A program made the position numbers and the translations under genes. The notes under the pieces are model-generated. The model was not told where the DNA came from. It was given only the letters and a program-made list of their open reading frames with translations, and searched no databases. DNA of 63,880 nt, the filler included, from Reticulomyxa filosa (taxonomy: Eukaryota; Protista; Foraminifera): assembly GCA_000512085.1 (NCBI GenBank). It is 13 parts of 13 records of this genome, joined end to end, with 100 filler letters (N's around TTAATTAATTAA, not from the genome) between each part and the next. Parts side by side here need not be neighbours in the genome. Positions count along the whole stretch, not along the records: positions 9,372 to 20,375 come from ASPP01005996.1; 12 more parts are not named here. One strand, 5' to 3'. This document shows positions 1,410 to 63,880 of the stretch, one piece after another. Numbering within the stretch: the first letter of the stretch is position 1; every line of letters starts with the position of its first letter.

Positions 1410-2404
1410 TAAAAAAAAAAAAAAAGAGCATTACTGTTGTTTTCTAATTTTTAAATGAAAAATAGTCACTAAACATTACATTCTGAGGTAGTCTTGTGAA
1501 TATTTTGAGCAATGCGACAAATTTATTCAAGTAGTAAGCTAACATTTAGTAAAATCAAATGCTGGTTTTGATTATTCTGCTTCTTCTCGTCAAACCACTC
1601 AAAATGAGATATGACAGGGAAGCAAGTGAATTGTTTTAACGGCACACGGTAAAACAGTTTAAACCTAAGTGGACGAATTTATTTTGTTAAACACAAAAAA
1701 CATTTTTTCGAATTACATTCCAATGGTTGGTCCTTTCTGTTACTTACGCTGTACTTTCGTTTTCTTTTTTTATACCATATTGTTTCTTTTACTTGAAAAT
1801 AGCGCTTCAATTGAACACTATACAAGATGAACCTATCACTTTAATATTCCTGCAAATTCGATTGTAAAATCTTGCCTTTTATTTAAATTAAAAATAAATT
1901 ACATGACTTCTAAATTGATCACAGCTCTTGCACGTTGAGGAATCAGCTTAGTCTGTCAATGTTTTTTTTTTTGCGCTCTGAAAGTGAAAACTTTTTTCAA
2001 TGAACTTATTGAAACCAAATGTAAGTTAATTGAACTTGACTCCAAAAACTTTTTTTGAATTGGAAAGAAATTGTTTATTCGTTTGGTTTTAGACACCCTA
2101 CACAATGATGCCTAAAGGAAAGTACAAAAAAAGTAATCGAGTTGACCGAGTTCGGATGAGGAAAAAAGATTTCCACTTTACGTTGTTTGGTAATTTGAGT
2201 GAAAGAACAAACAAGTAGTGCCATTAAAAGCATTTGATTTTCTCTGCAAACACTCAAAAATAACAAAAGAAGATCACAAACATACGGGCTTGTTCGCACA
2301 CAATTTACACTAAAGAAAAAGGATTGCCGAGATAACAATTAATTTGTTATTATCAATTATAATCATTATAATCATGATGATTATTGTAATTGTCATTGCA
2401 ATGA

Positions 2405-3866
2405 TTAATGACCAGTATTTCTTTGAGTATAGCTATAGTGGTTTGTCTTCTCACGATTTGCCATTTGATTCTTGTACGTCGAGGTATAGTAAGCATTTGG
2501 TGAATTGGTGTCGACCTGGCCTCTTCTGTGATGCCCAGTGAAGAAGTTACTTCTCTGGTCTTTTTCAGCGCTGAACTGGTTTGCATTGCGTGGCTTGGAT
2601 TGACCGTACCTAGCACCGTTATCGCGAGAATCGCTAGCGCTATAGTGTGAATAATCTGATGTACTATGAGTATATGGGTATTGCTGTTTCGGTTTTTTGG
2701 CGTGGCTATAGTAAGCGTCGTATTTGGGTTTGGAAGAACGAGAATAGTCGTAATTGTTATCGTTGTATGTTCCATATGAATCGTACTTGCTGTTGTGATT
2801 GTTATTGTTATTGTGATTATGGTTATGGTTATGATTATGATTATGATTGTAATTGTACTGTTCACGTTCACGCTCACGATCGCGGTTTGTGTTATTTCCG
2901 CGCTTGTCATTTGATCTCACCGGTTTTCGTTTATTTGAGTCTTGGTGGCGTCGTGGGTGGTGCGACGATGCGTCAGTTTCACCTTGATAAGATTTTTGTG
3001 CCTCATGGCCTTTCTTTTGAGTATCCGAGGATCGAACATCTTGTGAAGAAAAGACACGACCCGAGTTTGTCTTACCCTATATAATAACAATAAAACAATT
3101 TTTTATTATTATTATTATTAGTTGTCTGCGCTATTTCTTTCTCCCTTTTGGCAAAGGACAAAAAAAAAAAAAAAAAAAAATGATCACTATACCTTGCCCT
3201 GTTGATGACTTGGATAGCGTTGCTTTCTCAATGGTTGTCGAGTTTGCTCAGCTTGTTGGTATTTTTGTTCTTCATAAGCGTCATCTTGGTGATCATAGTC
3301 ATGATACTCATCCTCGTCTTGATAATAATTGTCATCGTCATAGCCGTTTTCATCGTAGCCATGTTCGTCATAAATTCGGTCCTGATCATCCTCTTCGTTC
3401 CCCTGCTCTTTGTCGTTTTCCTCCACTTCTTCCGCCTCTTCCTCGTCTTCTTCACTGGAAGGCATTCTGTCCAAATCGGCCCAAGACTTTGCTCCGCGCA
3501 TATCGTTCTCGTTTTCCTTCGTGCTTTCTTCGGCTGTTCCCGACTGGTTCTTTGCTTCTTTTTTTTTGTCACTATTGTTGTCGATGCTCTTATTACTGTT
3601 ATTGTTATTATTGTTATTGTTATTGTTATTGACATTGCCATTATCGTTATTGTAATACGCACTATTGTTACTATAATGTGCACGTTCTACTCCTTTTCCC
3701 ACAGCATATGTGTTCGGTTGGAGTGATATCTTTGTGTTAAAGTCCTTACTCAGGGAATCACCATTCTCTTCGCTCGTGAGAAGGTCGTCCGTGCTTGTGC
3801 CAATAGATTTTTTTAACTTTTCACTTCCGTGCGAATTCACGTACGTACTGTCGTTCTCATTTCCTA
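2405..3866 (-). CDS. Low-complexity N/D/E/Y-rich disordered protein (5'-truncated by contig end)
   Basis: ORF 3187-3840 splices (CAAG|gtatag ... atag|GGTAAG) into an open frame that continues into ORF 2405-2920. Contains NH, N and RE repeats. Confidence 0.55.
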
Positions 3867-5843: not shown

Positions 5844-6702
5844 TTAAGCAACTGATACTTCATCGTCAAAATCAAATAGAGTAACAGCAGGAGAAATAGG
5901 TATGCCAATTCCTTGACAAACAAGTCGATAATCTGAAAAAGTATTGATAGCAACATATATATTACACTTAGGTTGGTTAGGCAACTTTTCAAGCTTCATT
6001 CGAACAACATCACTCGTTTTTAAAGATTTACGAACAACCCCAGCCCGTTGTTCGCTGCCAAAAATGCTTGCAAAAATTTTTAATTGGTCTTCGTTCATTT
6101 TCACAGTTTGTTCAAATCCATAGAAACCAAACGAATAGCTTGACCCACCCAAAGGGGTCCTCCAATCTAAAAAAGGCTTCAGCACCACACCTGTGAATCA
6201 ATCAGCATTTTTTTTGTCAAATGAAATATAAATAAATAATAAATAAACAAGTTATATACAAACCAATGCCAACGTTGCCTTGACTTTTATGGATATTGAA
6301 AGAAAGGATCTCTTCCTTCGCTGTGGATTGTGGAGTAAATAGCCATTCTTGACAACGTATGGTTCCATATGAATTTCCGACAGCTTTCATCACACGCATA
6401 TCTTTGTGCTCAGGGGGCAACACTAAGTCATAAGCTTTATTAATATAATCGAATCTCCAGTTCCATTCCAATCCCGCAAATTTTGCAATTATACGCTGTA
6501 TGTCTACATATACGTCCACACCACACTTTCTCCCCCAATACTCGGCCACTACGCACTTTATCACATTCCATTCCAATGATTTTTTTTCGATTGCCAATTT
6601 CCATGCCATTTCGGACAGACGCCGTTGATGTCGTTTCTCTTCCCAGTTTTTTTCTTTAAATATATCGTCGTCGGACGTTTCAGTCACTGTATCAGCACTC
6701 AT
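5844..6702 (-). CDS. Two-exon hypothetical protein with a beta-rich (SPRY/B30.2-like?) C-terminus
   Basis: ORFs 6217-6705 and 5844-6188 are joined by a short intron. The FNIHKSQGNVGIG, SYSFGFYG and ISPAVTL segments resemble a SPRY pattern (weak). Confidence 0.5.
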
Positions 6703-8675
6703 CAATACTTTTTCTTCTTGCTATAGCGCCAAGACGAAGGGATTATATTGAATTTTTTTTTTTGACTCCCTCTTTTTTTTAGGTTTGACGTTTGTTAAAA
6801 CAATAAGATTAGACAGAAGTTTTATACTTCACAAACTTACGTTTTCAATTTTGACTGGAACAGCCATTGCCAATCAAAACTAAAAAAAAGGACTAAGTTT
6901 GAGACGAAGGTGGTTGCACGTGTGCTCACTGACGTAAATATTTAAAAAGTCATTTAACCAGTGGAAGCCAGTCTAAAATTTTTTTAACGCCCTTTTCTTT
7001 TTTTCTTCGTACATACTTTTAAGGTGTTGTTATCTTTTCTCTTCAGCAAAAAATTGACGCAACTAACAAATATTGGATACGAAAAAAATTTTAAACAGTT
7101 CTTACAAAATACGAACGATAAGGCTGTCAAATTGAAAAATTTTAATGGATATATTTTATATCATTTACTGTGTTTGCAAGAATTTTTGCGGTACAAATAT
7201 CTTTTTTGATTTGCAGTTTGTTTTTTTCTATTGACAAGTTTGCGTTTTCTTAACTCAAATCCTATAGTATTGCTAGTAAGGCATTTGTTTTGAAATATAT
7301 TTTTTAAAGGGCAATATCAGTTTTAAAAGAACGTAATTAAACTGGTACGTTTTCTTTGATAATTTGGATTTGAAACATGATGCAAAAAGATTATTCAATC
7401 AAGAAAATTACCAAAATGCTAAATGCAAAAAAATTTTTACTTCAAATTACCCCTCAAAATACAATTTCATCACAAAATTTGTACTTTCAATTGCAAAAAA
7501 CCATTCATTTCTTAAAACATTAAATTACATTTGATCGTGCGATTTTTCTTTAATTTTTTGCACCTATATGTATCAACACACAATCTCTTTTGTTCATTTT
7601 TCTTCAATTATTGCATAATTAGCAAAACAAAAAATCAGAAACACAGGTGAAAGTACTCATCTCTTTTCTTCAGTTCGTACAGAACTAACATCACTTTAAA
7701 TACAAAAAAAAGCAAGAAAAACAAACTTAACTCTAAAAAAATTTCCAAAAAAAAATTCGCAACATCTATTCAAAAAAAATAAAAAATCTTAATAAAATAA
7801 TAAAATAAAATGTTTAAACGAAAAATTGTAATGCCTCAGCCCCCTGTACAGCTTTTTTTGCTCGTCATCGAGATCGAAGTTTTAAACTTTCTCTCAAGAG
7901 TAGCAAGGAAAGTTGGTTCATCATAATAAAAAGATAAAGAATAACAAACAAAAACTAACTTCTTTAAATGTTGTTTGGATCTCACAAATAAACAAGTTAA
8001 ATTTTTGAAAAAGTCAGAAACCATTCAATACTAAAAAAAGGGGAAGGTACTACTTTGAGCACGTACTTTATGAAATTTTTTTGAATGAAGAAACAAATGG
8101 AACTATAGCCACGTAGCCTCGGAATTAAGCTTTTCCAAAACTATACACTAAGGCAAATTGAAAAAATATATAGCAAAACAATCTGATTGTATGATGTTCC
8201 AATGAAACGTTAAACAATTCAGTTAATATTTGTTTGCTATTATTACTAACTTATTTTGTTTTAAATATTTTAAAAAAGATCAAATTTAAAAAGAAAATTC
8301 TTTCATAAGATACAGTTTTCGATCCCAAAAACTAAAAATTTGTTTAGTTCAAAGTAAAAATATTGTTATTTAAATATTACAAATTCGATTTTTGTTTTTT
8401 AAAATATCGGTTATGAAACACATACAATATCCATGTTTTTAATGTCACATGAATCATCAGTACAATACATGCAACACAAATTACTACGACAAAGAGCCGT
8501 TACAATTGCTTGTTCAACTCAGTTTTGGCAATCGAATTACAACATAGATTTTTTCCGCGTTTAGTCTTAAATAAGTATTATTAAGATTTTTTCCGGTCAC
8601 TTGTTTATTGGTAACAAAAAAATCCTAAGAACCAGCCTTGTAGGTTTTTCATTGAAATAATCCATCCAAGAGAAA

Positions 8676-9371: not shown

Positions 9372-9797
9372 AAATTAAATACAAAAAAACATGCATTAAT
9401 GGATGCATGTTTACGAAGTATGTGGAGTTGTTTGTTGTCAAGACCTTCTTTAAAACCTTATCCTTTGGAATTTAATTCCAGTTCAAAATTAAATGATGAA
9501 ATCAAATCAAAGAAAGCGAAAATCAACAAAGAAATATTAGGAAAAGAGAGTGGTTGTAATGATATTGGCTATTTTACTTGGCCTACTTTAATACGATGTG
9601 ATACTCAAGAGTTATTAAATATTCCAATTGCTGTTTGTTGTGCTCGTTTCAATGTCAATCAAACGAATGATCAACATCTTTTAAAAAATGATTCACCATC
9701 AAATAATTCAATTACTTCCAATGCAAAAGCAGCTGACAATGTCAAAGATGAAGAAGATATCCAAGAGGTATATTATTTCCTTTTTTAATTTAAAAAA
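9372..9797 (+). repeat. 426-bp direct terminal repeat, copy 1 (matches 19950-20375)
   Basis: Matches 19950-20375 at an offset of 10,578. The one difference I found by eye is 9749 T vs 20327 C (synonymous GAT/GAC). Confidence 0.95.
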
Positions 9798-10001
9798 GTC
9801 AATAATTTAAACAATCAAATAAATCAGAAATCAAAACTATCTAAGGAAATTCATCATTCATCCAAGGATGAGATTGGTGAAGAAACAAAAACTGATCAAG
9901 TGGATCATTTATCCAAGAATGGAATTGGTGAAGAAACGAAAGTTGGACAAACAGAGAGTTCATCTAAGGATGGGATTGGTGAAGAAACGAAAACTGACTA
10001 A
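9372..10001 (+). CDS. 3' end of the coiled-coil/Mieap-like gene (upstream tandem copy of the gene at 17473)
   Basis: Same exon as 19950-20345, then intron 9768-9827 (gtatat...aatcag) and last exon 9828-10001 KSKLSKEIHHSSKDEIGEETKTD...IGEETKTD*. Confidence 0.75.
9858..9998 (+). repeat. 51-bp coding tandem repeat x3 (17-aa unit xSKxxIGEETKxxQxxx)
   Basis: Units start at 9858, 9909 and 9960, each containing ATTGGTGAAGAAACRAAA. Confidence 0.85.
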
Positions 10002-11022
10002 ATAGGCCAGCGGATTTGGATTAAAGAGGGAATTTTATCGTGGGTGTGTCGTATGCAACCACAAAACAAATTGTCTATTTGTCAGTCACATGAATTTCAT
10101 CAAAGCACGAAGATGTTAGAAAGAGATTACAACATTGTTTTTCACTCGGTCTAGTGTGGTGTTTAATGACTAACCGATTGTAATTAGCTTTAAATTCTTT
10201 TGGAAAAACTCATTCAAAATTTCTAGGTAAAAGAAGTAAAATAAAGCGATTAAATCTTCAACCCACACAATCTTTTTTTGACGAGCGAATATCTTTCTTC
10301 ACACAAACTCAAATAATAGCCATGCAAGATATTAGCTAGATTTCGTACACTGTTCACATCTTTTTAGGTGATTGTAAGTTACTTACTTTAATTCACAAAT
10401 GTTTCAATAATTGTCAAAATCTTTTCTAAGAATATTTTGGTCAATCTTCTTGCATACATTTCTTTGTATCGTTTAAGAATATAACTTTTTGTGATATCAA
10501 TGTTTATAATTATTTGCGATTCTCAATAATGTATTTTTCTAACTTGACTGTAGAACAGCCCTTGGAAGTGTAAAGAAGTTCACCGAACTTTCAAAACTTT
10601 TCTTTACTTTGTTTTGTTTGTCATTTTGTTTTTATTTAATTCATTTTCTTCTGTTGAAAGTGGCTCAAAAGAGCACATTTTGAATTACACTTACTTTCTC
10701 AGTGAAGTTCCGCTTACAACTCAATTCTTTTTATAATTTTCGACAAAGTAACTTAATTTTTAACACACAAGGTTAAATTTTCAACTTTTTTCATACCTAT
10801 AATGGTGTTATTCTATCTTTTTTTTATAGATACTTTTGGATTTTTTTCAATATTGATGAAATTGTTCAGTCAACTGATCTATTTTTTTATGGTTTAGATG
10901 ATGCCATTTTGTCATAAAATCTTCAAGTTGTTAGTCTTTTAGTCTTTCCAAATTTTTCAAAAATGTAACAGTTTGTTCTATTAGCCCAAAGATCAAGAGT
11001 GCACAGTACACAAAGAAGGATA

Positions 11023-13432
11023 TCACAAATGGTCCTTTCTTTCAATATACTCGAACTCACTACCGATTTTGATGGTGTCATCCGTACTTCCACCATCAAA
11101 CTTAACTTGAGCAAATTGAGGATGTCCTGTATCTGGATGTTTGTATGACAATTGAACTCGATCATTTCTCAAAATGATAGTGATTTCAAAATCAACTTGT
11201 TCAGAAAAAGGATGTTCAAAAAACATTTTAAATTTTTTGAGCAGCTGACATTTGGCTCTATCGTCACAATATTGTACATCTTTGTGTTTAGACTTGTATA
11301 GTTCAAATTCTACAAATTTCTGCCGCCGTGGGAGGGTATACACCTCTTTGTGTTCCTGTTTCAATTTATTATTTATTGTTTCAAACCTGTGTGTCTAAAA
11401 AGTTATATACAATAAGTGCATATTAGCAAAACACATGTCACTGAACTTTTCCATCGTCATACTTCTCATCTCGTCGAATAATTGTATAAAAACACCTCTT
11501 GCGTATGTAGCCGGTGGATGACTCCAAAGAGCTAATTTTGTGATCGTCATCAGGATCTCCGGGATACCATATCTGATCGACACCCCATCCCAATGTTGAA
11601 GGTGCTCGAAGAGATGATAAATCTTTTTGATTGACGGCCCAGAGAACAGAGCCAAGTACAACACTTTCGTGAGGATTGGATGGTCGATAAATTTTCAGAG
11701 GAGCTTTTCGTTCACTAATGAGTTTTTCTAATCTTGGGACAATGTAAGGACAATTGGAAAATCCACCTGTCACTATTAATACTTTTGGTTTCACTCGCTC
11801 ATGATCCAAAAGTTTTGAAACAAACTCGCAAATGTCGTGTAACACTTGCTCATGCAGAAATAGCCAGGTTTCATAAGACAACTCCAAAAACGATTCACCC
11901 ACCAATCTTATGTGACTGATAAACCACAAAACAAAACAAACATATTGTACAACTCTTGTCTACTTGCTATTTTTTTTCTCTTCTTCACTTGGATTTGCTA
12001 TTGGTCTTGGAGTACGTTTGTAATGCATCTCCAACTGCAGCAAGAGTTCCGAAAGTCGATTGCAAATAACTTTTAAAGTTTCTACTCAATCTTACATTCC
12101 ATTGCTCACGTGGAGGCAGTGAATGTTTTGCACGCCAAAATTCATTTCTTTGTTCGAGCCATGATTCCGAATTCCTTTTGTTTTGTTGTGATTTTCTTTT
12201 TCTTTTAATTTTTACATTTATTAATTCAATGCCACTCAATTAACAAAAACTTCAAAGTTGTTTGTTGTTGTATTGAAACTTTTCTTGAAATTTACGAATA
12301 ATGCTCTCTCCAAAAATTTTTGAAAGTAAAGCCTCAAATGCTAGGTCTACAGTTATGCCTCCAATGTTCAGACCTTCTCGGTGATGTGTTTCTGCCATCC
12401 TTTCCTCATCCACAAACGTTAAGCATGCAGCATCGACTGTACCTCCACCCATGTCCAATAGCACTATTTGTTCCCTATTTTCATGTATTTTTAATTTTTT
12501 TTTGGAGTCACATATACATGTATACGTATACATATATTTTTTCAAACCCTTTATGGAATTTCAATCTTTTTGCTTCATCGCTATCTTTGCTTTTGCTTTG
12601 GCTAACCACAGCAAATGCTGCCGCAATGGGCTCAAAACATATTTCGATATGCTGCATTTCACACCTTTGACCACACTCTCTCATCGTTTCGGTATTCTTG
12701 TTATCAATTTTCATTTGTGTTATTGTACATGTACGTTTTTTTGATTTGTAAAATCTGAAGGATGAACACTGCCATTCACTCTTTTTTTTTTTTGATTAAC
12801 TTCGTCCTCCCAAATTGCAGGGACAGTCAACACATACAACACATTCCTTGGATTCAGGGGTTTCCATTTATCTCCAAACATGTTTTTTCGATTATCTTCC
12901 ACTTGTTTTATTGCTGTTTCTTTAATGGCGTTCAGTGCCATGACAAATAATGTCATTGCAGGCATTTTATATGTCCCACTACTGTCCAGTATTGTCATTG
13001 ACCGAAAGTTAGCGCCTTTGCTTAGCAATACTGACTTAAAGTTCGCAAAGTATGCATATTTGCTCCTATTTTCTGCCTGTGTTTGCAGATTAAACATAAA
13101 AATGAAAAATAGAGCCACTCTTTTTTCTTTTGTTTTTCGTTATTTGCCTTTAGTATTGTCCAAGTGTTCAACTTCAGCAAAACTTTTGTTTGGAAAAATT
13201 TCTCTTCTGCTTTGTAGCCCCAACAATCCAACTTTTTTGTTTTGCGATCCAAGAGCAAAGCTGACAAATTTTTACTTTTGGCATACTGGGCCATTTGTGG
13301 ATAGCCACCAGTATGCCGAATTAAGTCCACTCTAGGAATAACACCTGGCTTTGAATGTTCGCATGCCACCGCAGCAGAACCAAAGGAGCCAAAATCTATC
13401 CCAATTACTTGATCGAATATCTGGCTTGACAT
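11023..13432 (-). CDS. Atypical Hsp70-family ATPase, HSPA12-like (gene A), about 7 exons
   Basis: IGIDFGSFGS (phosphate-1), FANFK, LTVPAIW, FEPIAAA, LLDMGGGTVD (phosphate-2), IGGITVDLAF, IVTGGFSNCPY (adenosine) and ESVVLGSVL. Non-canonical C-terminus without EEVD. ATG at 13432; introns e.g. 13183-13077 and one starting at 12800. Confidence 0.88.
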
Positions 13433-13794
13433 GGTGAAGACAAATGTGAGTGTCCAAAACAACAACCAAAAAAAAAGTGTTTTTACACTTGAAAAGATAA
13501 ATTAGTTATTGTTGATATTTGATTTTTTGGGTTGTTTAGTATACTTTGCATAAAGTACAATTGTCATAAATTGCTATCTTTATTTCAGAATGAACTACGA
13601 TAGATAGATTCTTTGAACAGCAGGCTCCACAACCTCATGAAACCAAGGTAACATCAATAGCATTCAAATTAATCGTTATTTTACGATGCTATCAAATGTT
13701 TGAACTCGGCTTGTTATTTTTTACTTCCCTGTTTTTCTTTTGTGCCACAAATTCTTGAGTCAGTCAGGAATAATCAAAATAGTGCAAAGTAGAA
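13433..13794. promoter_or_regulatory. Putative bidirectional promoter between the head-to-head Hsp70 genes
   Basis: 362 bp between the ATGs. Carries an inverted motif pair AACAACCAAAAAA (13461) / TTTTTTGGGTTGTT (13523) that is conserved in the paralogous spacer 62470-62817. Confidence 0.55.
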
Positions 13795-16700
13795 ATGATT
13801 GTAGATTTGTGCTTTGTCATGGATTGTACAGGTAAGAAAAAGAAAGACGAGCAAGGTGGCCTATCTCGAAAGAAACACATGTTTGTGATTTTTTTTTTGG
13901 TGTAGGATCAATGTCCAGTTGGATAAACCAATGTAAGAACGATATCCAAGGTATTGTGGCCAAAATATTGAGTGAGTATCCTTTCGTTAAGATGAGACTG
14001 GCATTTGTGGGTTACAGGTATGTTTTCATTGTTCATTTTGATAATGATAAAACAAGAAAATAAAACATCCACTCCAGAGATTATGGAGATACTCCTGATT
14101 TTGAAATACTGAACTTTACGGAGGATGTCAATGTATTTAAGGAATTTCTTGGGAAATTAAGCGCGACAGGAGGTGGCGATGAATGTGAAGATGTTATTGG
14201 TGGATTGGAAAAATGTGTGGGACTTAAATGGTCATCAACAACCAAAGTATTGTTTCATATTGTTGAGTCCTCTTTTTTTTTGTTTACATTATTTGAAGAG
14301 GGGAAAAAAGTAGCTCCAAAAAAAAAAAAGAAGAAATTCTAAACTGAGAAAATTTTTTTAAAAAAAGGGAGACGCTCCTCCACATAATCGCAAGTATCAC
14401 GATGGAGCTGGAGACAGTTATCCAGACGATACAAAACGAGATCACACTAAGGTTTTGAAAGAACTCCAAAAAAAAGGAAACATGAGATATTACATTGCAA
14501 AATTGCATGACAGCTTAAACAAAGTTTGGTGTGTGTGCTTTGAGAAGATCAAAAGCGCAATAGAGGGAAAGAAGGGGGGGGGAGAAAAAAAGCATGTTTC
14601 ACATTTGCATTTGTGTTGGATTAAAAAAAAGATGATTCGAGTGTTTAAAGCCACTGGTCACGAAATGAACTTAACAGTGGAAGAGCATGAAATGCCTGAT
14701 ATTATGCATCTTTTTGAGGGCGTGGTGCGGTCTGTGACGGATGCAATCAAAGCAATTCGTGTTTCCAAAAAAAAATGGTTTATTTCTTATGTTTTTTTTT
14801 TTTGGAATGAATAACTTCTTTTTTGATATAGTTTTGCTAACGAAAAAAATTGCTAGGAAGATGAGTGGAGAGTCAGATATTGGTATAATTGCTGGTAAGC
14901 GTAAAAGGCATCCGTTTAAGGCATTTGCGGGTATTGACTTTGGAACTGACGGCACTGGATTTGCCTATGGTTTTTCCGATGGAAAAATATACACAGAACA
15001 AAAATGGGAGGGGTGTCTGTTAGCAGAAGTGAAAAACAAAACCAATATATTGCTAGACAGCGATGGCGAATTTATAGCATTTGGCCAAGAGGCAACTGAG
15101 AGATACGTTTCAAGCGCCGATCGTTCCTTAGAATTTTATGAAAGATTCAAAATGGCTTTGTACGGTTAGGGCTATAAAAACTGATCACTTTTATATATAT
15201 ATAAAAAAGAGTGTATAGAATAGCATAACGACAGAACAACAATAATAATGGTAACAGATAAAACGTTAGAGGAAGTGCATGAGAAGTACGACGATGAAAA
15301 AAAAGAAATGGACTTGGAGCCTTATTTGACAGCTGCAAATGGAAAGAAAAGGAAATCAATGGATGTGTTGGTGCAAGCCTTTAAATTTATGAGAGGACAC
15401 ATAATGGGAGTCCTCAAAGACACTACATTTGTGGAGGAGGTCGAAGATGTGCAGTGGGTGGTGACTGTGCCTGCCATTTGGTCCAATACTGCAAAAAACA
15501 GAATGAGAGAGGCTGCGCTTCGTGCAGGATTAATAAATAACTCCATTCCTGATCACTTGATTATTGCATTTGAACCAGGTATGGTTCGTTAATTGTCACT
15601 GCTCCCCATTCCCTTTTCTCAAAAAAAGAAAATGTTCCAGCTGCTCAATAAACTTTAAAAAAAAAAAAAAAACAGAGTGTGGAAGCGTCGTCGCACGTAG
15701 ATATTGCGATCTTAAAAAAGGAGATAAATACATCCTGTTGGATTTGGGTGGAGGCACTGCCGATATTGCTTGCCATAAAGTATTGGATGAAACCAGTGTA
15801 TCGCAAATCTATATTCCGAGTGGCGGGGCGTGGGGTAGCACATATATCGACGAAGCTTTTTGGGGAATACTTTGTGAGATATTCGGAAGAGAGACGATGG
15901 AAGAGTTCAAAATCAAGTATCCCAATGAATTCGTTCTCTTGAAAGAAAATTTTCGACAAGCCAAACACAGCTACGACCCAGCCTCGTCCGATATCCCCAA
16001 GATAAAGATTGACATCATGGTGGATTTCATGGATACACACAAGATTGATTTGGAAGCTATGGGCAAGAAAGTGAAAGCGTACAAATTGAAAGGCGTGAAA
16101 AGTACATTTGAATTTGATACCAATTTCGCGACTTTAAATTTGGGTCATGGAGGATGGAAATTTTTAATGGACATAGTCATTGACCCTCTCATTACGCACA
16201 TGCGGAAATTGCTAGCACAACCACAATTGCGAGGGTGCGAGACCATGTTGTGCGTAGGGGGATTGTCCACATCACCTTATGTCATACAAAGACTACGAGA
16301 TGTGTTTGTCACTCAGCTTAAAGTTATTAAAACAATCACAAAGCCAGAACAGCCTGTTTTGGCTGTAATGGAAGGTGCAGCTCGGTTTGGTATGACTCCG
16401 TCCTTGATCACAGAATACATCATGGAGCACACGTACGGCTTGAAATGCGCCAGATTTTGGGCAGAGTCGGATGGGGAAGAGAGCAAACTTTGGAGTGAAG
16501 AAGAAGGCAGATACGTATTTGAAGATGGGTTTGAAATATTTACCCGCAAGAACAGTAAGTTGAACGTGCATGACCCTCCGAAGGTGCAATATTTCCAACC
16601 TCTTAACAAAGGGGAAAAAGAAATTATTATTGAAATTCATCGCAGCATTGAAGAAGATCCCACACAATGTACCGATAGAACACTGTGTGCACTTGCCCCT

Positions 16701-16862
16701 TTCCGATTACCAGAAGATTGGTGGGATGGAGTAGGTGCGGAAGACAAGGAAATTCCAATTGCCTTCTTTTTCAACAGAGCCGAAATTCAAGTCAAGGTTG
16801 AATTAGAAAATTACAGCGAGAAAGATAGATATATCAAAGTCGAATGGCTGAAAGGGGCATGA
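13795..16862 (+). CDS. vWA domain-Hsp70 (HSPA12-like) fusion protein (gene B), about 8 exons
   Basis: vWA: MIVDLCFVMDCTG|SM (MIDAS-like), AFVGYR|DY, GGGDECEDVIGGL, LFHI|GDAPPH. In-frame phase-2 splice (TG|gttt ... ctag|G AAG at 14857) into Hsp70: AGIDFGTDG, FYERFKMAL, WVVTVPAIW, FEP|ECGS, LLDLGGGTAD, GGAWGSTYIDEAF, CVGGLSTSPY and AVMEGAARFG. Confidence 0.88.
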
Positions 16863-17472
16863 GTATTATGTTTTTTGATGGTTTCTTGTGTTTGCTGTAA
16901 TAAAAGCGCAGTCGATCGTCAAAAAAAAATTACTCGTTCAAACAGTAACATTTTCAAGCAATTTCATCTTTTAGTAGAACTTCTAAATAAAAAAAATGAT
17001 ATTTTCAATGTGAAACTCAGTCAAATTCAAAAAAAAAATTTGTGGTAAAATCTCATTTTTGAATTGGAAAAAATCGATAAAGATTCGAAAGATTCATTTT
17101 CAGCCTTTTCTTTTAAGTCAGAGCTACTTGACTGGCAAAATCGTTCTTCAAATTTTTAAAATACTGTCTTCAATTCCTCTTCGTTTTTTTTAAGACACTA
17201 TTGTTTTAACTACAAGAACGGTTGCTACTTTTTTTTGCTGCAAAAGCTTTTTTCTTTACTTTTTATATGTGATTATCTTGAAAACGCATAACTCTCGTTT
17301 TCAACTGTAGCCAAGATACAGATTACATTAACACACAAAGTTAGCACGAATAATCAAACATTAAAGGGGGAACACACAAGTTGAATTGTTGCTTCTTCTA
17401 GGTTTTCCCTAACAAATTCACTCTGTATTAGGTCTATCTCCAACTCAAGAAGAATTCCCAGAAAACGTGAGA

Positions 17473-20375
17473 ATGGAAAGACACGAACATATCCAAAGTC
17501 TAGAAAAGAGAGGCTTTGAACGTAAAGCCACGAACGAAAATAAAACTTCTACAAACGAAAGTAAAAGTTCTGCGTGTGAACACGAAACGTACATGAGAGT
17601 ACAGGGTGAATACTACGTAAAAGTGTTAAGAATAATAAAGAGATTTTAAATGTTTATGTGTTTGAAATCAAATAGAAAAGAAATTTGAATTGACATTGTT
17701 TTTGGAGTGGCTCTTGTTTTTGTGTTGTTTTGGTAATATTATCAACAAAATTTGATCACACAAAGTACGCTGGATAATGAGTTTCCAAAGAGCGAGCCTA
17801 GTATAAGAGTTAATTTAAAAAGCTGGCGCTTAAATGAAGATGGCATTGCATGCATGGATGATCTGTTAGAAGACAGCAATACGTCGCTAGGTGACGCTGT
17901 AGAAAAGCTTTTAGATAACATAAAATCGACACCGAACGAAGCAGTTCAATTTTATTTTTCTTATGTACACATTAATTCAAAATGTATTTTATGATATTTG
18001 ACATTTGACAGTCAGAAGTTGCAAAGAGTGATTCACCAATGGTGTCAGTGAAAGAGCTGAGCAAACTTTTTTCAAACCCAAACGTTAGTCCATCTTCTTT
18101 AAAAATCTGGAGTTTCTCTTACTCAAACAATTATTAAAATTAAACAGATTCAGTGGATGAAAAATCACAAAGAAAGTACAATAGAGCCCGTTTTTGTTGT
18201 CAAACACATTAAAAATGAACATATTTTCCAAAAGAATCAAGAGTATTTTAACTATTCGTCTGCTGCTTTGACCAAATATTTTGAAGATTTGGAGGTAATT
18301 TGTTTATTTTTTTGAAGAAACATTATTTACTGCATTTCAACCTCATGCTATTCAATGTTTAGACAAATGACTCTCTCGAAGTGTTGAAAAATATTATTCA
18401 GTCTTTAGTATCGTGTTGTGCCGAATTGATGTCTTCTCAAGGAGTTTGATGTCTTTTATTTCTTTTTTAAAAACAAAATATTAATTTTGTTTAAGTCATT
18501 AAAAAATAAAAAAGCTGTCAGCTGGGGCGTTGGTGCTTTATGAAGCGGAAGGTAGATGGTTTTCGGCTTCGACTTATAAAACTTCTCGTGTCAGCAAAAT
18601 TGTAATGGATAGGAAAAACATTCAAGTGAAACTAGAAGATGGCAACTGGTGTTCCCCAAATATGCTTACAGTTTCATTTGTATTTTTCTTTTCTCCTTTA
18701 TTTGACGCAAATACACAAGTGATAAACTGTGCAGGTGCTTCCGAAACATTTGGTCTCTCAATTTTCTCAAGTTATTTCAAACAATGTTTTATTTTAATCA
18801 TCACAGCAATATAATAATATACTATCGCTTGTGCACATGTGTTTTTTTATCACAGATGAATATAAGGGAAACCGAGTTAGCTATTTAATCAAACAAAAAA
18901 AAGTGATTTTAGAGTTAATTTATTAATGTATTCTCACAACGCTTGAAAAAAACAACAGAGCCATAACCAATTTGCGTACTACCGTCCAAGAACGAGATAC
19001 ACTTATTACAACATTGAAAGAACAGCTTGACGACTGTGCAAAAAAGCTAGAAATCTCTAACAAGTTATAATTTGCAAAACTTAAAAATAAAAATTTAAAA
19101 ACAGGCATCATCATATATGTACAAAATATGGCGATTGTTCAATATAGGAAACGGAAAGAGCAATCTGAGGAAATCAAAAAAATTAATGATGATAATAAAA
19201 ATCAAAAAAACAAACTCAATTCATTAAACACTGAAAAATCGACTATGTATGAACAACTTGAAAGCTACAAGCTAGAAATAAAACACTCAAAGAGTTTACC
19301 ACTATACATCACACTCTTAACTTTGATCATTTATTGTATTGGCTATACGTAGGAAAAAACTATCCACTTTTTGATATACATATATTAAAAATTGTCGAAT
19401 AAAGAATTTATATTATTGTCTGGCATAAATAATGTAGAGCAAATGCAAAATTGTCCAGTGAAGTGAAAGATTTGCGAGGAAGGATTTGTGAGTTAACGAT
19501 AGGAGTAGGAATGAAAGGAATTCCCTGCAATGAATAAAATTGTGACAGCTTACGATGCAATACGCGATAACTATCGAGTAAGTTATACAAGTGAAATAAT
19601 GACACAATTAAAAAGTAGTGAGGAAACCAAAAAATTTGATACAGCACTTTTGGCAAGATTTGCACATTGTGTATCATTCACAATTTTGAGATTATCTTAT
19701 GAATTCATACAATCATATTGGGATACACAATTACAAAATTTGCAAAAACCATTTGGATTAAATAAAGAAACTGCACAAAGATACTTTCAAACCGTATTCC
19801 AAGAACAATTTACTTCTTCACTCACACAATTACTTCCACATGGAAAACAATTCATTAATTCGAAATTGAAACAACAGCTTATCAAAAAAAAAAAATACCG
19901 ACAATGTTTAGTAGATGTGATTATTAATGAAATAGAAAAAGAAGATAGCAAATTAAATACAAAAAAACATGCATTAATGGATGCATGTTTACGAAGTATG
20001 TGGAGTTGTTTGTTGTCAAGACCTTCTTTAAAACCTTATCCTTTGGAATTTAATTCCAGTTCAAAATTAAATGATGAAATCAAATCAAAGAAAGCGAAAA
20101 TCAACAAAGAAATATTAGGAAAAGAGAGTGGTTGTAATGATATTGGCTATTTTACTTGGCCTACTTTAATACGATGTGATACTCAAGAGTTATTAAATAT
20201 TCCAATTGCTGTTTGTTGTGCTCGTTTCAATGTCAATCAAACGAATGATCAACATCTTTTAAAAAATGATTCACCATCAAATAATTCAATTACTTCCAAT
20301 GCAAAAGCAGCTGACAATGTCAAAGACGAAGAAGATATCCAAGAGGTATATTATTTCCTTTTTTAATTTAAAAAA
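17473..20375 (+). CDS. Multi-exon coiled-coil protein with putative Mieap (SPATA18)/GrpE-like C-terminal domain (gene C). Its last exon is seen at 9828-10001
   Basis: Series of short exons from MERHEHIQSLE. Heptad-rich exons at ~18930-19500. Long exon 19530-20345 contains LMDACLRSMWSCLLSRPSL...IGYFTWPTLIRCD, resembling the Mieap C-terminal pattern (helix-W-x4-P-x-L ... YxxWPxL). Confidence 0.65.
19950..20375 (+). repeat. 426-bp direct terminal repeat, copy 2 (matches 9372-9797)
   Basis: The end of this contig duplicates its start. Confidence 0.95.
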
Positions 20376-61588: not shown

Positions 61589-62469
61589 AAAAACAAAAAG
61601 TAACTCAACTCTTCAAAGAATTGAAGTTTTTTGTATCATCCTATCTTTGCTATGACTGTGACTAACCACAGCAAATGTTGCTGCAATGGGCTCAAAACAT
61701 ATTTCAATATTATGCATTCCACACTTTTGTCCACATTCTCTCATTGTTTCTGTATTCTAATTGTTTCATTTTTATTTGTTTTGTTTTATGAAACACTAAG
61801 AAAATGGAGAGACACAAGTGACTCCACTCCTTTTTTTAAATAAAAAATATTAACTTCGTCATCCCAAAGCGCAGGGACAGTCAATACATACAATACTTTC
61901 TTTGGATCAAGAGGTCGATATGCCTCTCCAAACATATCTTTTCGGGTCATTTCCACTTGTGTTAATGCTGTTTCTTTGATGGCATTCAGCAGCATCACAA
62001 ACAATTCCATCACTGGCATTTCATGTGTTCCACTGCTATCTTTTATCTTCATCGATCGAAATTTAGCGTCTTTGGTCAATACAGAAGGTTTGAAGTTTGC
62101 GTAATATGCAAATTTGCTCCGCTCCTCCGGCTATATTTATAGTTGAAATGTGTTTAAAAAAAAGGAAAAGAGTGGCTCCACTTTTTTATCGTGTTTATAG
62201 TAGTTTGTTGAAAACGAAACTTTTGTTTGAAAATATTTGCTCTCTGCCTTGTAACCCCAACATACGACTGACTTTGTTTCGCGTTCCAAAAGTAGAGCCG
62301 ATAAATTTTTACTCTTGGCGTACTGAGCCATTTCCTCACAACCTCCAGTGTGTCGAATTAAATCCACTCTAGGAATAACTCCGGGCATTGTATGCTCACA
62401 TGCTGCTGCAGCAGAGCCAAACGAGCCAAAATCAATCCCGACCACTTGATCGAATAGTCCATCAGACAT
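61589..62469 (-). CDS. Paralog of HSPA12-like gene A (5' exons; truncated by spacer)
   Basis: MSDGLFDQVVGIDFGSFGSAA, LTVPALWDDE|NTETMREC and FEPIAA. Same intron positions as 11023-13432; exon 1 is 66/83 identical by manual count. Confidence 0.9.
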
Positions 62470-62817
62470 GGTACCAACAAAGACTAGTTAGAGCAACCAA
62501 AAAAAGGTCTTAGTTAAAAAGGTAACTAGTAGTTAGGTTTGTTTTTTTGGATTGTTAAATATACAAATTTTTTTATAAACAAATTTGCAATAAGGTGCTG
62601 TACTTATTTTAAACGAAATGATAGAAAAGCAGACTTAAAACATCAAAGTTTTTAGCAGCACAAGTACAATACTTTTTAAGCACTGGAAAAGTACATCACT
62701 TTCAATCTCTTTCTTTGTGTTGTTTGACGAGGGTCAATACTTTGGGTTGCCCCCTTTTTTTTTTCTGTATCTTCTTTTTGTTGCTGTGTGTATCACCGAA
62801 AATTGTGAAAAACAGAA

Positions 62818-63880
62818 ATGATTGTTGATTTGTGCTTTGTAATGGACTGTACAGGCAAGAAAAAGACATGTTCACTAATTGGAAAAAACAGAGGGAGAAA
62901 TTTGTCACGTTGTGGTTGTTGTATAGGCTCAATGTCCAGCTGGATAACCAAATGCAAGGATGATATCCAAAACATTGTAGCCAAAATATTAACCGAATAC
63001 TCTTTTGTTAAAATTAGAGTGGCATGTGTTGGATACAGGTACATTTCTTCTTTGTTTTCAATGAAAATAATACAACAACAATAAAAAAACTCACTCCAGA
63101 GATTATGGTGATACTCCTGAATTTGAAATATTGGATTTTACTGAAGATGTTGACGCATTTAAAGCCTTTATGGGAAGGCTAAAAGCAAGTGGAGGTGCTG
63201 ACGAATGTGAAGATGTGATAGGTGGATTAGAAAAGTGTGCAGAGCTTGCATGGTCATCGCCCATCAAAGTATTATTCCACATTGTTAAGTCCTTGTTTCA
63301 TTTTAAAAGAGTAGCACAAAAGTAGCTCCAAAAAAAAAAAAGACACATAACAAACTTTTAACGAAGAAAAAAATATAAAAATAGGGAGACGCTCCACCGC
63401 ACAATCGCATGTATCACGATGGAGCCGGAGACAGTTATCCAGACGACACAAAACGAGATCATAACGTAGTGTTAAGAGCACTCCAAAAAAAAGGGAATAT
63501 GAGATATTACATTGCAAAATTGAATAATAGCTTAAACAAAGTTTGGTACTGTGTGAAGTGGAGGGAGAAAAAGAGACATTATTTTTGCATTTGAGTATAT
63601 CAAAAAAAAACAAAAAAAAAAACAGATGATTCGAGTGTTTAAAGCAACTGGCTACGAAATGAATCTAATAGTAGAGGAGCATGAAATGCCTGATGTTATG
63701 CACTTATTTGAAAGTGTGGTACGATCTGTAACAGATGCGATTCGAGCGATCAGAGTCTCCAAAAACAAAAAGTTTATGCGTTGTTCTGTTTCTTGGAGTT
63801 ACATCATTTTACATTTTGCTTTCAACTCATACAAAAAAAAAAAAAAACTTGGACATAGACGAGTGGCATCACATCGTGGT
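62818..63880 (+). CDS. Paralog of vWA-Hsp70 gene B (vWA exons; runs off the window)
   Basis: MIVDLCFVMDCTG|SMSSWITKCKDDIQ...GGADECEDVIGGLEKC...GDAPPHNRMYHDGAGDSYPDD, with identical intron positions. The first intron has a GC donor. Confidence 0.9.

What the first reader, a model, noticed from the sequence alone, without database searches (positions are those of the whole stretch)
9372..20375. Operon-like three-gene cassette: Hsp70(HSPA12-like) <- -> vWA-Hsp70 fusion -> Mieap/GrpE-like coiled-coil protein, amplified as a 10.6-kb unit
Seen in sequence: two atypical Hsp70 ATPases lie head-to-head 362 bp apart, one fused to a vWA domain. A coiled-coil gene follows them. The whole contig is bounded by a 426-bp direct repeat, and a diverged second copy of the head-to-head pair sits at 61589-63880. 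Established: HSPA12-type Hsp70s lack the canonical substrate-binding domain and EEVD tail. vWA domains act as adaptors for ATPases (e.g. MoxR-vWA), and Hsp70s need nucleotide-exchange factors such as GrpE (coiled coil plus beta head). Inference: this is a co-regulated, co-amplified module (a possible Hsp70 heterodimer with a vWA adaptor and a cognate co-chaperone or effector), perhaps for stress or immunity. I know of no description of this arrangement.
Basis: partly seen in the sequence, partly recalled or inferred. Interest (0 to 1): 0.92.

Follow-up and report, generated by a model that had tools for sequence, protein, structure and literature searches.

The report
Amplified Hsp70-vWA-Mieap gene block
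[quoted passage not shown] The block is a real physical link between gene families that also expand together in bivalves, but a shared function is not shown.

Summary
The piece is Reticulomyxa filosa contig ASPP01005996.1 (11,004 bp). Its ends overlap by 426 bp with one mismatch, giving a period of 10,578 bp.

- Gene A (minus strand) and gene B (plus strand) start 362 bp apart, head to head. Both are HSPA12-type Hsp70 ATPase domains.
- B begins with a vWA domain. This fusion is expressed as one transcript in the foraminifera Ammonia and Nonionella.
- Gene C has an N-terminal part, about 110 aa of coiled coil, and a MIEAP (PF16026) domain. It is not GrpE-like.
- In this copy, C carries a 2-nt deletion that shifts the frame between the coiled coil and the MIEAP domain.

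At least seven other R. filosa contigs hold diverged copies (about 72% nucleotide identity) in the same order. One of them is a second complete unit about 10.6 kb long. All three genes are under purifying selection: dN/dS is 0.1-0.2 for B, 0.2-0.3 for A and 0.3-0.75 for C.

The functional coupling is inferred, not shown. No RNA runs were listed and the complex prediction gave no verdict. Because the copies arose by en-bloc duplication, their shared order is not independent evidence. The co-expansion of HSP70 (HSPA12) and Mieap families in bivalves is an independent hint. I rate this a new variant of known kinds, of moderate to good interest.

The parts
9372..9797 (.). Left copy of the 426-bp terminal direct repeat. 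It equals 19950-20375 and holds the 3' end of gene C (stop codon at 9786-9788).
   Evidence: 426 bp, 1 mismatch, period 10,578; it matches C6 residues 146-283.
9853..10005 (+). Tandem repeat of 51 nt, about 3 copies, encoding ...GIGEETK... peptides. The NCBI model P0029 splices it onto the end of gene C. Other C paralogs carry similar GEETK stretches, or a WD40 extension, at this place.
   Evidence: repeat; P0029 model; P0032, P0034, P0037; WD40 ORF after C in L006.
11023..13432 (-). Gene A: an HSPA12-like Hsp70 with the ATPase domain only, about 6 exons, ATG at 13432. Conservation among paralogs places the stop at 11023-11025. NCBI splits it into three models that reach 10931.
   Evidence: Motifs GIDFGS, FEPIAAA, LLDMGGGTVD and VTGGFSNCPY were read. 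It is 23-37% identical to B. Paralogs in L003, L006 and L012 are 45-78% identical by exon, with dN/dS 0.2-0.3.
13433..13794 (.). Shared divergent intergenic region of 362 bp between A and B, a presumed bidirectional promoter. It has patches conserved in L006 and L012 and no canonical heat-shock element.
   Evidence: alignment of three paralogous loci, and an HSE scan allowing one mismatch that found nothing.
13795..14760 (+). Gene B, vWA part, 5 exons. It starts MIVDLCFVMDCTG|SMSSW (MIDAS-type DxTxS) and continues with GGGDECEDV and HIGDAPPHN.
   Evidence: VWA_4, E = 4.9e-6 on one exon; splice sites read in the DNA; VWA_4 above threshold in P0048, P0052, P0061 and others; family alignment.
14759..14831 (+). 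Proposed 73-nt GT-AG intron joining the vWA frame to the ATPase frame. The exact borders are not proven.
   Evidence: in-frame GT...AG candidates; all three paralogs change frame here, and L002 has no ATG between the last stop and GIDFG, so its ATPase part cannot start on its own.
14832..16862 (+). Gene B, HSPA12-like ATPase part plus a beta-rich C-terminal region, 3 exons. The large last exon starts at 15675 and the stop is at 16860-16862. NCBI's model P0001 (505 aa) covers 15248-16862.
17413..18811 (+). Gene C, N-terminal exons of unknown fold. A possible ATG lies near 17476. The exons at 17737-17991, 18157-18312, 18366-18467 and 18503-18811 are shared with paralogs.
   Evidence: The AF2 model of the full-length relative P0035 is poor in this part.
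18954..19510 (+). Gene C, coiled-coil exons, about 110 aa in three pieces. The last piece starts after the acceptor at about 19437.
   Evidence: P0035 is modelled with one helix of about 100 residues just before the MIEAP domain.
19511..19518 (+). 2-nt deletion relative to eight paralogous or orthologous copies. GGAATTGAAAGTGAATTT has become GGAATGAAAGGAATTC. It shifts the frame between the coiled coil and the MIEAP domain.
   Evidence: DNA alignment of 9 copies; sequence.
19515..20366 (+). Gene C, MIEAP domain: a helical bundle plus a small beta sheet, residues about 1-238 of this frame, followed by a disordered tail. The stop is at 20364-20366. The NCBI model (272 aa) starts at ATG 19530.
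19950..20375 (.). Right copy of the 426-bp terminal direct repeat.

Best explanation
The piece is one unit (period 10,578 bp) of a tandemly amplified three-gene block of Reticulomyxa filosa.

**The three genes**
- A is an HSPA12-type Hsp70 that has the ATPase domain only.
- B, divergently transcribed from a shared 362-bp region, has an N-terminal vWA (MIDAS) domain fused to a second HSPA12-type ATPase. It belongs to a fusion family found across Foraminifera.
- C, downstream of B, has an N-terminal part, about 110 aa of coiled coil and a MIEAP domain, the same layout as animal Mieap/SPATA18.

**Shown:** the families, the layout, the amplification, the conserved order in diverged copies, and purifying selection on all three genes.

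**Inferred (the mechanism I commit to):** the three genes form one lineage-specific stress or defence module.
- A and B are made together and act as a two-ATPase machine, comparable to an Hsp70-Hsp110 pair.
- B's vWA domain tethers the machine to a partner.
- The ATPases use ATP to control assembly or disassembly of the coiled-coil MIEAP protein C. Animal Mieap forms condensates.
- C is the faster-evolving, variable-tailed output or sensor part.

The logic resembles prokaryotic three-part systems built from an NTPase chaperone, a vWA domain and an effector. The copy of C in this particular unit is probably disabled by a 2-nt frameshift.
For: **Anatomy.**

**Unit and tandem nature**
- The 426-bp end overlap has one mismatch.
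- A second contig, L012 (10,559 bp), carries C, then A reversed, then vWA-B, then C. It starts and ends inside gene C and is circularly permuted relative to L006.

**Same order in diverged copies.** L002 to L006 and L012 keep the order at about 72% nucleotide identity and 50-80% amino-acid identity.

**Selection.** dN/dS is 0.09-0.21 for B's large exon, 0.20-0.29 for A and 0.31-0.75 for C's MIEAP exon. dS is 0.4-1.6, so these are old copies that have been kept open.

**The fusion is real and expressed.**
- Ammonia sp. P0052 (1044 aa) and Nonionella stella P0061 and P0079 carry VWA_4 plus the ATPase in one transcript.
- L002 has no start codon for a separate ATPase gene.

**HSPA12 identity.**

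**MIEAP identity**
- The language-model search scored 0.93 with 186 of 256 shared features.
- phmmer from C found P0046 at E = 5e-5 in 1.84 billion proteins, and P0046 scores 47.5 bits on Pfam MIEAP against a cut-off of 27.
- The AF2 model (pLDDT 77.5) matches a MIEAP cluster at TM 0.61.

**C is the variable part.** It has the higher dN/dS, and its tail is either WD40 or GEETK repeats.

**Independent parallels in bivalves**
- The HSP70 orthogroup has 68 genes per bivalve species against 4.4 in other molluscs. The Mieap orthogroup has 53 against 0.6. Both are among the most bivalve-enriched families (PMC8382680).
- HSPA12A and SPATA18 both rose in cadmium-exposed zebra mussel gills (PMC11036304).

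**Background.** Mieap forms condensates (PMC10845071). Prokaryotic conflict systems pair an NTPase chaperone with a vWA domain and an effector (PMC7159879).
Against: - There is no expression or co-expression data: no sequencing run was listed.
- All copies derive from one ancestral arrangement by en-bloc duplication in one genome, so the repeated order is inherited and is not independently selected evidence.
- Synteny could not be tested in any other species, because only transcriptomes of other foraminifera were reachable.
- An exhaustive search found C-type relatives only in R. filosa, one environmental transcript (P0035) and one bacterial-type contig. Ammonia and Nonionella have B-type fusions, but no C-type was seen there.
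- L010 holds a C-type gene with no B within 6.7 kb upstream. L002 lacks the MIEAP exon after its C exons.
- The bidirectional region has no heat-shock element.
- This unit's C is frameshifted.
- The roles assigned to A, B and C are analogy only.
Confidence: 0.42

Rival explanations
1. Hitch-hiking. A chunk of repeat-rich genome that happened to hold three functionally unrelated genes was amplified as tandem or segmental copies. The HSPA12-like genes may be the selected cargo, as in bivalve expansions, and the MIEAP gene simply rides along, or the reverse. The conserved order reflects common descent only.
For: - All copies are collinear at the DNA level, introns and intergenic DNA included, which is what en-bloc duplication gives.
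- Exceptions exist: L010 has C without B, L003 has an extra inverted C, and L002 lacks the MIEAP exon.
- C-type genes were not found in the other foraminifera that do have the vWA-HSPA12 fusion.
- This unit's C is broken.
- The complex prediction gave no support; that result is not evidence either way.
Against: - All three genes stay open and constrained through dS of 0.4-1.6 in several copies. A passenger gene would be expected to decay in some units instead.
- A and B are two old, distinct HSPA12-like lineages (23-37% identical) kept head to head over a conserved 362-bp region in 3 of 3 loci.
- The same two families co-expand independently in bivalves (PMC8382680).
Confidence: 0.38
2. Gene C is a GrpE-like nucleotide-exchange factor (long helices plus a beta head) that serves the two atypical Hsp70s.
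For: - The general shape is similar: long helices followed by a small beta sheet.
- A GrpE cluster appears among the atlas fold rows, and a GrpE-DnaK model appears in the Foldseek list.
Against: - Those matches are at noise level: TM 0.30 and 0.38, and Foldseek E = 2.3.
- No GrpE appears among 48,161 solved chains aligned in full, where the best Z is 5.4 to unrelated helical proteins.
- Pfam and NCBIfam give no GrpE hit.
- The domain belongs to MIEAP by four lines of evidence.
Confidence: 0.03
3. The 10.6-kb unit is not a chromosomal tandem array. It is an extrachromosomal circular amplicon, or the end overlap is an assembler artefact of a single-copy locus.
For: - The contig closes on itself.
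- L012 is also about one unit long and circularly permuted relative to L006.
- Read depth and long reads could not be examined.
Against: - The overlap has a mismatch, so two non-identical copies were joined.
- L006 shows the same C-to-A junction inside a contig that is linear across it.
- L003 shows a rearranged version, as expected of chromosomal arrays.
- Tandem arrays that collapse to unit-length contigs are the usual cause in short-read assemblies (my own knowledge).
Confidence: 0.1

Closest known systems
HSPA12A/HSPA12B (Hsp70-12), the most divergent Hsp70 subfamily, massively expanded in bivalves
   Same: - It has an Hsp70 ATPase domain with DxG, EPxAA and DxGGGT motifs, a beta-rich C-terminal part in place of the canonical substrate-binding domain, and no EEVD tail.
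- It is about 600-700 aa long.
- It expands in a lineage-specific way by tandem duplication.
- Bivalve HSPA12A/B-like proteins are the nearest named relatives (E = 1e-42 to 1e-74).
   Different: - In the quick tree the foraminiferal genes form a clade of their own (SH-aLRT 98).
- B carries an N-terminal vWA domain.
- A and B are two distinct lineages fixed head to head.
- They are physically linked to a MIEAP gene.
- No heat-shock element was found.
Mieap/SPATA18 (Pfam MIEAP, PF16026)
   Same: - It combines a coiled-coil region with a C-terminal MIEAP domain (PMC10845071).
- The family is also hugely expanded in bivalves (PMC8382680).
   Different: - Similarity to the Pfam model is detectable only through intermediates. 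The window's own exon does not reach Pfam's threshold.
- It occurs in a rhizarian protist, whereas PMC10845071 reports orthologs in metazoans, not in fungi and not in bacteria.
- It has extra N-terminal exons and variable tails (GEETK repeats or WD40).
- Nothing is known of a mitochondrial or cardiolipin role here.
Prokaryotic MoxR-vWA 'ternary' conflict systems and GTPase-tubulin-HSP70 systems (Kaur et al. 2020, PMC7159879)
   Same: The logic is the same: an NTP-driven chaperone-type ATPase, a vWA co-chaperone domain, and a variable, faster-evolving third component, all encoded side by side and diversified in many copies.
   Different: - It is eukaryotic, with introns and separate promoters.
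- The ATPase is of Hsp70 type, not AAA+ MoxR.
- The vWA domain is fused to the ATPase.
- The third component is a MIEAP protein, not a known effector.
- No homology to those systems beyond the vWA superfamily was tested.
Hsp70-Hsp110 (Sse1) heterodimer of two Hsp70-superfamily ATPase domains
   Same: Two diverged Hsp70-superfamily ATPases could pair through their nucleotide-binding domains, one regulating the other. A and B are encoded divergently from one short region.
   Different: This is pure analogy (my own knowledge). A-B pairing was not tested here, and neither A nor B resembles Hsp110 specifically.

Membership tests
Hsp70 superfamily, HSPA12 (Hsp70-12) type | Hsp70/actin-fold nucleotide-binding domain, shown by significant sequence similarity to solved Hsp70 ATPase domains | tested here: met
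   A profile of the B family hits 120 solved Hsp70 sequences, the best (BiP/Kar2) at E = 3e-16. Pfam HSP70 is matched by 6 of 17 family members. The window's own exons alone stay below Pfam's threshold.
Hsp70 superfamily, HSPA12 (Hsp70-12) type | Catalytic and phosphate-binding motifs: DxG(T/S) phosphate 1, EPxAA, DxGGGTxD phosphate 2, and the GG adenosine motif | tested here: met
   Read directly in the translations. A has GIDFGS, FEPIAAA, LLDMGGGTVD and VTGGFSNCPY. B has GIDFGTDGTG, FEP|ECGS, LLDLGGGTADI and VGGLSTSPY. The motif list follows PMC12692333.
Hsp70 superfamily, HSPA12 (Hsp70-12) type | Closest named relatives are HSPA12A/B rather than canonical Hsp70, Hsp110, HSPA13 or HSPA14 | tested here: met
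   [quoted passage not shown] This was tested for the B family through its paralog P0002. A was compared only exon by exon.
Hsp70 superfamily, HSPA12 (Hsp70-12) type | No canonical substrate-binding domain, lid or EEVD tail | tested here: met
   B ends ...RYIKVEWLKGA* and A ends ...EYIERKDHL*. The PDB profile matches cover only the ATPase domain. The C-terminal 100 aa carry the DUF8340 (PF27033) signal seen in HSPA12-like proteins.
vWA domain (Pfam VWA_4, PF25106) | Score above Pfam's gathering threshold | tested here: inconclusive
   One exon of the window scores 26.6 bits against a cut-off of 27 (E = 4.9e-6). The joined model was not built. The paralog P0048 scores 30.2 bits, and the orthologous fusions score 33-44 bits. 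They align with the window's exons throughout.
vWA domain (Pfam VWA_4, PF25106) | MIDAS metal-site motif (DxSxS-type, then a later T/D and D) | tested here: met
   The motif D-C-T-G-S spans the exon 1/2 junction, with GGGDECED and HIGDAPPH downstream. It is conserved as DxTxS, GGxDxxED and DAPPHG in the foraminiferal family. Metal binding itself was not tested.
MIEAP domain (PF16026) | Sequence membership: a Pfam hit above threshold, directly or through significant intermediates | tested here: met
   There is no direct hit. Through intermediates, the window exon reaches P0046 at E = 5.3e-5 against 1.84 billion proteins, and P0046 scores 47.5 bits on MIEAP against a cut-off of 27 (E = 2.7e-12). 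The window exon also reaches P0035 at E = 1.7e-39, and P0035 scores 20.9 bits on MIEAP (E = 3.8e-4).
MIEAP domain (PF16026) | Same predicted fold as family members | tested here: met
   The AF2 model (pLDDT 77.5, pTM 0.77) has as its best atlas fold match a cluster that is 97% MIEAP, at TM 0.61 over 206 residues. The language-model features score 0.93 with 186 of 256 shared. No solved structure exists for comparison.
MIEAP domain (PF16026) | Function as in Mieap/SPATA18: condensates, cardiolipin metabolism, mitochondrial quality control | not testable with these tools
   The only basis is analogy to PMC10845071.
GrpE nucleotide-exchange factor | GrpE sequence or fold similarity | tested here: not met
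   There is no Pfam or NCBIfam GrpE hit. The atlas TM is 0.30, Foldseek gives E = 2.3, and no GrpE appears in the full VIA scan.
Operon (polycistronic unit) | Genes co-transcribed on one RNA | not testable with these tools
   No RNA runs were listed. The genes have spliceosomal-type introns. A is on the opposite strand, and about 600 bp separate B from C, so this is a eukaryotic gene cluster.

The most novel reading that the evidence does not exclude
HSPA12-type ATPases and MIEAP-domain proteins are an old functional pair in eukaryotes: an ATP-driven regulator and its coiled-coil, condensate-forming client or effector. The foraminiferal block, with a vWA tether added, would be the 'Rosetta stone' that reveals the pairing. 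This would explain why the two families expand together in bivalves, and it would give the poorly understood HSPA12 and Mieap proteins a shared, testable mechanism. A further possibility is that the units are amplified as 10.6-kb circles.
Probability: 0.22. Interest if true: 0.8.

Novelty: new variant of a known kind. Interest (0 to 1): 0.6.

Why it matters
HSPA12 proteins are the least understood Hsp70s. MIEAP-domain proteins are known from essentially one mammalian protein. Yet both families reach dozens of copies in bivalves, for reasons nobody has explained.

Here the two families sit side by side, with a vWA adaptor fused to one ATPase. They have been copied together many times and kept intact in a distant protist. 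That turns a vague co-expansion into a concrete hypothesis: the ATPase controls the MIEAP scaffold. The hypothesis can be tested in tractable systems, for example:
- human HSPA12A/B with SPATA18;
- oyster gene pairs;
- recombinant foraminiferal proteins.

The finding also documents a vWA-Hsp70 fusion family across Foraminifera, and MIEAP domains outside animals.

Tried and rejected
- **Direct family scans of the window's exons.** Pfam, NCBIfam and PDB scans were mostly blank. The families showed up only through relatives and profiles.
- **Sequencing runs.** A search for runs covering 13780-19779 listed none. So read laying was not used, and splice junctions, expression and copy depth remain untested.
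- **Complex prediction.** The B-family ATPase (P0002 residues 76-664) was folded with this window's MIEAP exon (residues 1-240). The score was 0.00, verdict "no answer". This is not evidence either way.
- **Structure searches of the MIEAP model.** Foldseek against PDB gave nothing below E = 0.6. VIA against 48,161 chains gave only generic helical matches, Z at most 5.4.
- **Full-length C relative.** The AF2 model of P0035 left the N-terminal 200 aa unresolved.
- **Atlas search with the vWA C-terminal part of P0008.** It gave only weak Hsp70 rows.
- **Search for MIEAP relatives and fusions from P0046.** It found only P0046 itself, so no profile-profile test against animal Mieap could be made.
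- **Bivalve HSPA12 locus L009.** It showed no neighbouring gene calls within 10 kb and no MIEAP match, so it is uninformative.
- **Heat-shock element scan of the A/B region.** Nothing was found.
- **RNA genes.** Rfam and tRNA scans of the piece found nothing.
- **Paper searches.** No paper holds both HSPA12 and Mieap, and none describes a vWA-HSPA12 fusion. The R. filosa genome paper was not in the library.
- **Spliced models.** Spliced proteins of A, B and C were not joined. All searches were made exon by exon or with database proteins of paralogs. As a result, A could not be placed in the tree or folded, and an A-B pair could not be tested.

Full report
**Identity of the piece.** Window 9372-20375 is identical to Reticulomyxa filosa contig ASPP01005996.1 (assembly GCA_000512085.1, 11,004 bp). 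It is AT-rich, 26-43% G+C, and its genes are split by short GT-AG introns. The first and last 426 bp are the same sequence with one mismatch, at 9749 versus 20327, so the contig closes on itself with a period of 10,578 bp. No tRNA or Rfam family is present. The only internal repeat is a 51-nt unit in about 3 copies at 9853-10005.

**Genes A and B.** Gene A runs on the minus strand from ATG 13432. Gene B runs on the plus strand from ATG 13795.
- Both encode Hsp70-type nucleotide-binding domains. A carries GIDFGS, FEPIAAA, LLDMGGGTVD and VTGGFSNCPY. B carries GIDFGTDGTG, FEP|ECGS, LLDLGGGTADI and VGGLSTSPY.
- Single exons barely register in Pfam. A profile of B's relatives, however, hits 120 solved Hsp70 ATPase domains, the best at E = 3e-16.
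- Neither protein has a canonical substrate-binding domain or an EEVD tail.
- A and B are only 23-37% identical to each other. A has no closer relative among the 148 proteins collected. They are therefore two old lineages, not a recent inverted duplicate.

**The vWA fusion.** B starts directly with a vWA beta strand and a MIDAS-type motif, MIVDLCFVMDCTG|SMSSW. GGGDECEDV and HIGDAPPHN follow downstream. One exon alone scores 26.6 bits on Pfam VWA_4, against a cut-off of 27.

GenBank's annotation splits B into a 349-aa model (vWA plus the first ATPase exon) and a 505-aa model (P0001). Four observations show that it is one gene:
1. A 73-nt GT-AG intron (14759-14831) joins the two frames.
2. In the paralog L002 there is no ATG between the last stop and the GIDFG motif, so the ATPase part cannot start on its own.
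3. The paralogs have single models of 814, 869 and 871 aa (P0048, P0049, P0050), and P0048 scores above the VWA_4 threshold.
4. Transcriptome-derived proteins of Ammonia sp. (P0052, 1044 aa) and Nonionella stella (P0061, P0079) carry VWA_4 at 33-44 bits plus the ATPase. P0052 aligns collinearly with the vWA exons, the ATPase N-terminus and the large exon of gene B.

A quick maximum-likelihood tree puts all foraminiferal sequences in one clade (SH-aLRT 98), apart from the bivalve HSPA12s. The R. filosa B genes are monophyletic (support 100). The vWA-bearing forms lie basal to the vWA-less ones. This was the quick search only and the root is at the midpoint, so I take it merely as consistent with an old fusion.

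**Gene C.** Gene C lies about 600 bp downstream of B on the same strand. Exons shared with paralogs lie between 17413 and 18811. Coiled-coil pieces of about 110 aa follow (18954-19510), and then a last exon that ends at stop 20364-20366. That last exon is a MIEAP domain, by four lines of evidence:
- The language-model search scored 0.93 with 186 of 256 shared features, to MIEAP clusters.
- An exhaustive phmmer search of 1.84 billion representatives found only 19 relatives. One is P0046 (E = 5e-5), which passes Pfam MIEAP at 47.5 bits. Another is P0035 (E = 2e-39), with a sub-threshold MIEAP hit.
- A good AF2 model (pLDDT 77.5: a helical bundle plus a small sheet) has a 97%-MIEAP cluster as its best fold match (TM 0.61).
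- The full-length relative P0035 is modelled as a helix of about 100 residues followed by this domain. That is the layout of animal Mieap (PMC10845071).

GrpE likeness fails. The TM-score is 0.30, Foldseek gives E = 2.3, and no GrpE appears in a full scan of 48,161 solved chains.

In this contig, C carries a 2-nt deletion at 19511-19518 relative to eight other copies. The deletion shifts the frame exactly between the coiled coil and the MIEAP domain. The two lost bases are not one homopolymer slip, so I take the deletion as probably real. The downstream frame is still open and constrained, so it would be recent.

**The block is a repeated unit.** Seven further R. filosa contigs carry parts of it. 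Arrows show the direction of transcription.

| Contig | Arrangement |
|---|---|
| L002, L004, L005 | B→ C→ |
| L003 | B→ C→ ←C' ... ←A |
| L006 | C→ ←A vWA-B→ |
| L012 (10,559 bp) | complete second unit: C→ ←A vWA-B→ C→ |

- L012 is collinear with this contig over 5.9 kb at 72% nucleotide identity.
- L012 begins and ends inside gene C. Its two ends together make up the continuous C gene of L006, so it too is about one period long (about 10.63 kb).
- The exhaustive search also showed at least 15 C-type gene fragments, all from R. filosa.
- Exceptions: L010 has a C-type gene without B upstream, and L002 lacks the MIEAP exon.
- Some C paralogs continue into WD40 repeats, where this copy has GEETK repeats instead.

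**Selection.** Nei-Gojobori estimates on single exons are given below.

| Gene (exon) | dN/dS | dS |
|---|---|---|
| B (large exon) | 0.09-0.21 | 0.9-1.6 |
| A | 0.20-0.29 | 0.6-1.4 |
| C (MIEAP exon) | 0.31-0.75 | 0.15-1.0 |

The copies are old, kept open and functional. C evolves fastest.

**Regulation and interaction.** The 362-bp A/B region has conserved patches in three loci but no heat-shock element. No sequencing runs were listed, so expression, splicing and depth are untested. The one complex prediction allowed (B-family ATPase with this MIEAP exon) gave no verdict. As a consequence, A could not be folded, placed in the tree or paired with B.

**Interpretation.** The descriptive reading is secure: a tandemly amplified, diversified three-gene block. 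I put about 0.42 on a true functional module and about 0.38 on hitch-hiking of unrelated neighbours.
- The module reading is favoured by retention of all three genes through deep divergence. It is also favoured by the fixed head-to-head pairing of two distinct ATPase lineages, and by the faster, variable C.
- Independent observations in bivalves also favour it. The HSP70 orthogroup has 68 genes per bivalve species against 4.4 in other molluscs, and the Mieap orthogroup 53 against 0.6. Both are among the most enriched families (PMC8382680). HSPA12A and SPATA18 both rose in cadmium-exposed zebra mussels (PMC11036304).
- Against the module reading, the order is inherited within one genome, and no C-type gene was seen in other foraminifera.
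- The mechanism I propose is that A and B are co-expressed ATPases. B's vWA domain tethers them, and they control assembly of the coiled-coil MIEAP protein with ATP. This rests on analogy with Mieap condensates (PMC10845071) and with prokaryotic systems that pair an NTPase chaperone with a vWA domain and an effector (PMC7159879).

**Novelty.** The families are known. I found no description of the vWA-HSPA12 fusion family in Foraminifera, of the HSPA12-MIEAP linkage, or of its amplification as a unit. My verdict is a new variant of known kinds, with interest 0.6.

Noticed in passing
L007:10001-11719 (GCA_003358065.1, contig PJEL010001422.1): P0046 is a 572-aa protein with a coiled coil and a MIEAP domain above Pfam's threshold. 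It is encoded without introns among bacterial-type genes (FtsH, PheS, SpoU methylase, a Na+/H+ antiporter), with a SET-domain gene nearby. PMC10845071 states that Mieap orthologs are absent from bacteria. This may be a eukaryote-like protein of an intracellular bacterium.
   Followed up: partly
window 19511-19518: A 2-nt deletion frameshifts gene C in this unit, relative to eight other copies. It could be a recent pseudogenisation or an assembly error. No reads were available to decide.
   Followed up: partly
L006:3064-3951 and L012:188-1297 (P0037): Some C-type paralogs continue past the MIEAP domain into WD40 repeats. This window's copy has a 51-nt tandem repeat encoding GEETK peptides at the same place (9853-10005). 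The C-terminal modules of C are therefore variable.
   Followed up: partly
L003:4396-5100 (+) and 6011-6724 (-): Two MIEAP exons lie convergent, tail to tail, on one contig, about 84% identical in protein. This is a rearranged version of the unit, with a long coiled-coil ORF on the minus strand (6812-7747).
   Followed up: no
L012 (10,559 bp); P0049's contig (10,223 bp): Other contigs that hold the block are also about one unit long. This suggests the short-read assembly collapsed several tandem arrays into unit-length contigs.
   Followed up: partly
P0052, P0051, P0057, P0061, P0079, P0064 (alignment A4, columns about 215-300): The vWA domains of the Ammonia and Nonionella fusions carry an acidic insert of about 80 aa between the DAPPHG..YHD motif and the D.FP..H..DP motif. 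The R. filosa copies lack it.
   Followed up: no
P0066, P0068, P0082 (bivalve HSPA12A-like, about 1000 aa): Long bivalve HSPA12-like proteins carry an extra Pfam domain, PF21523, and no vWA. N-terminal add-ons to HSPA12 ATPases therefore differ between lineages.
   Followed up: no
L010:1-5000: Upstream of a C-type gene there is no A or B. Instead there are ORFs of different composition on both strands (2081-3320). This is the one clear exception to the B-to-C linkage.
   Followed up: no
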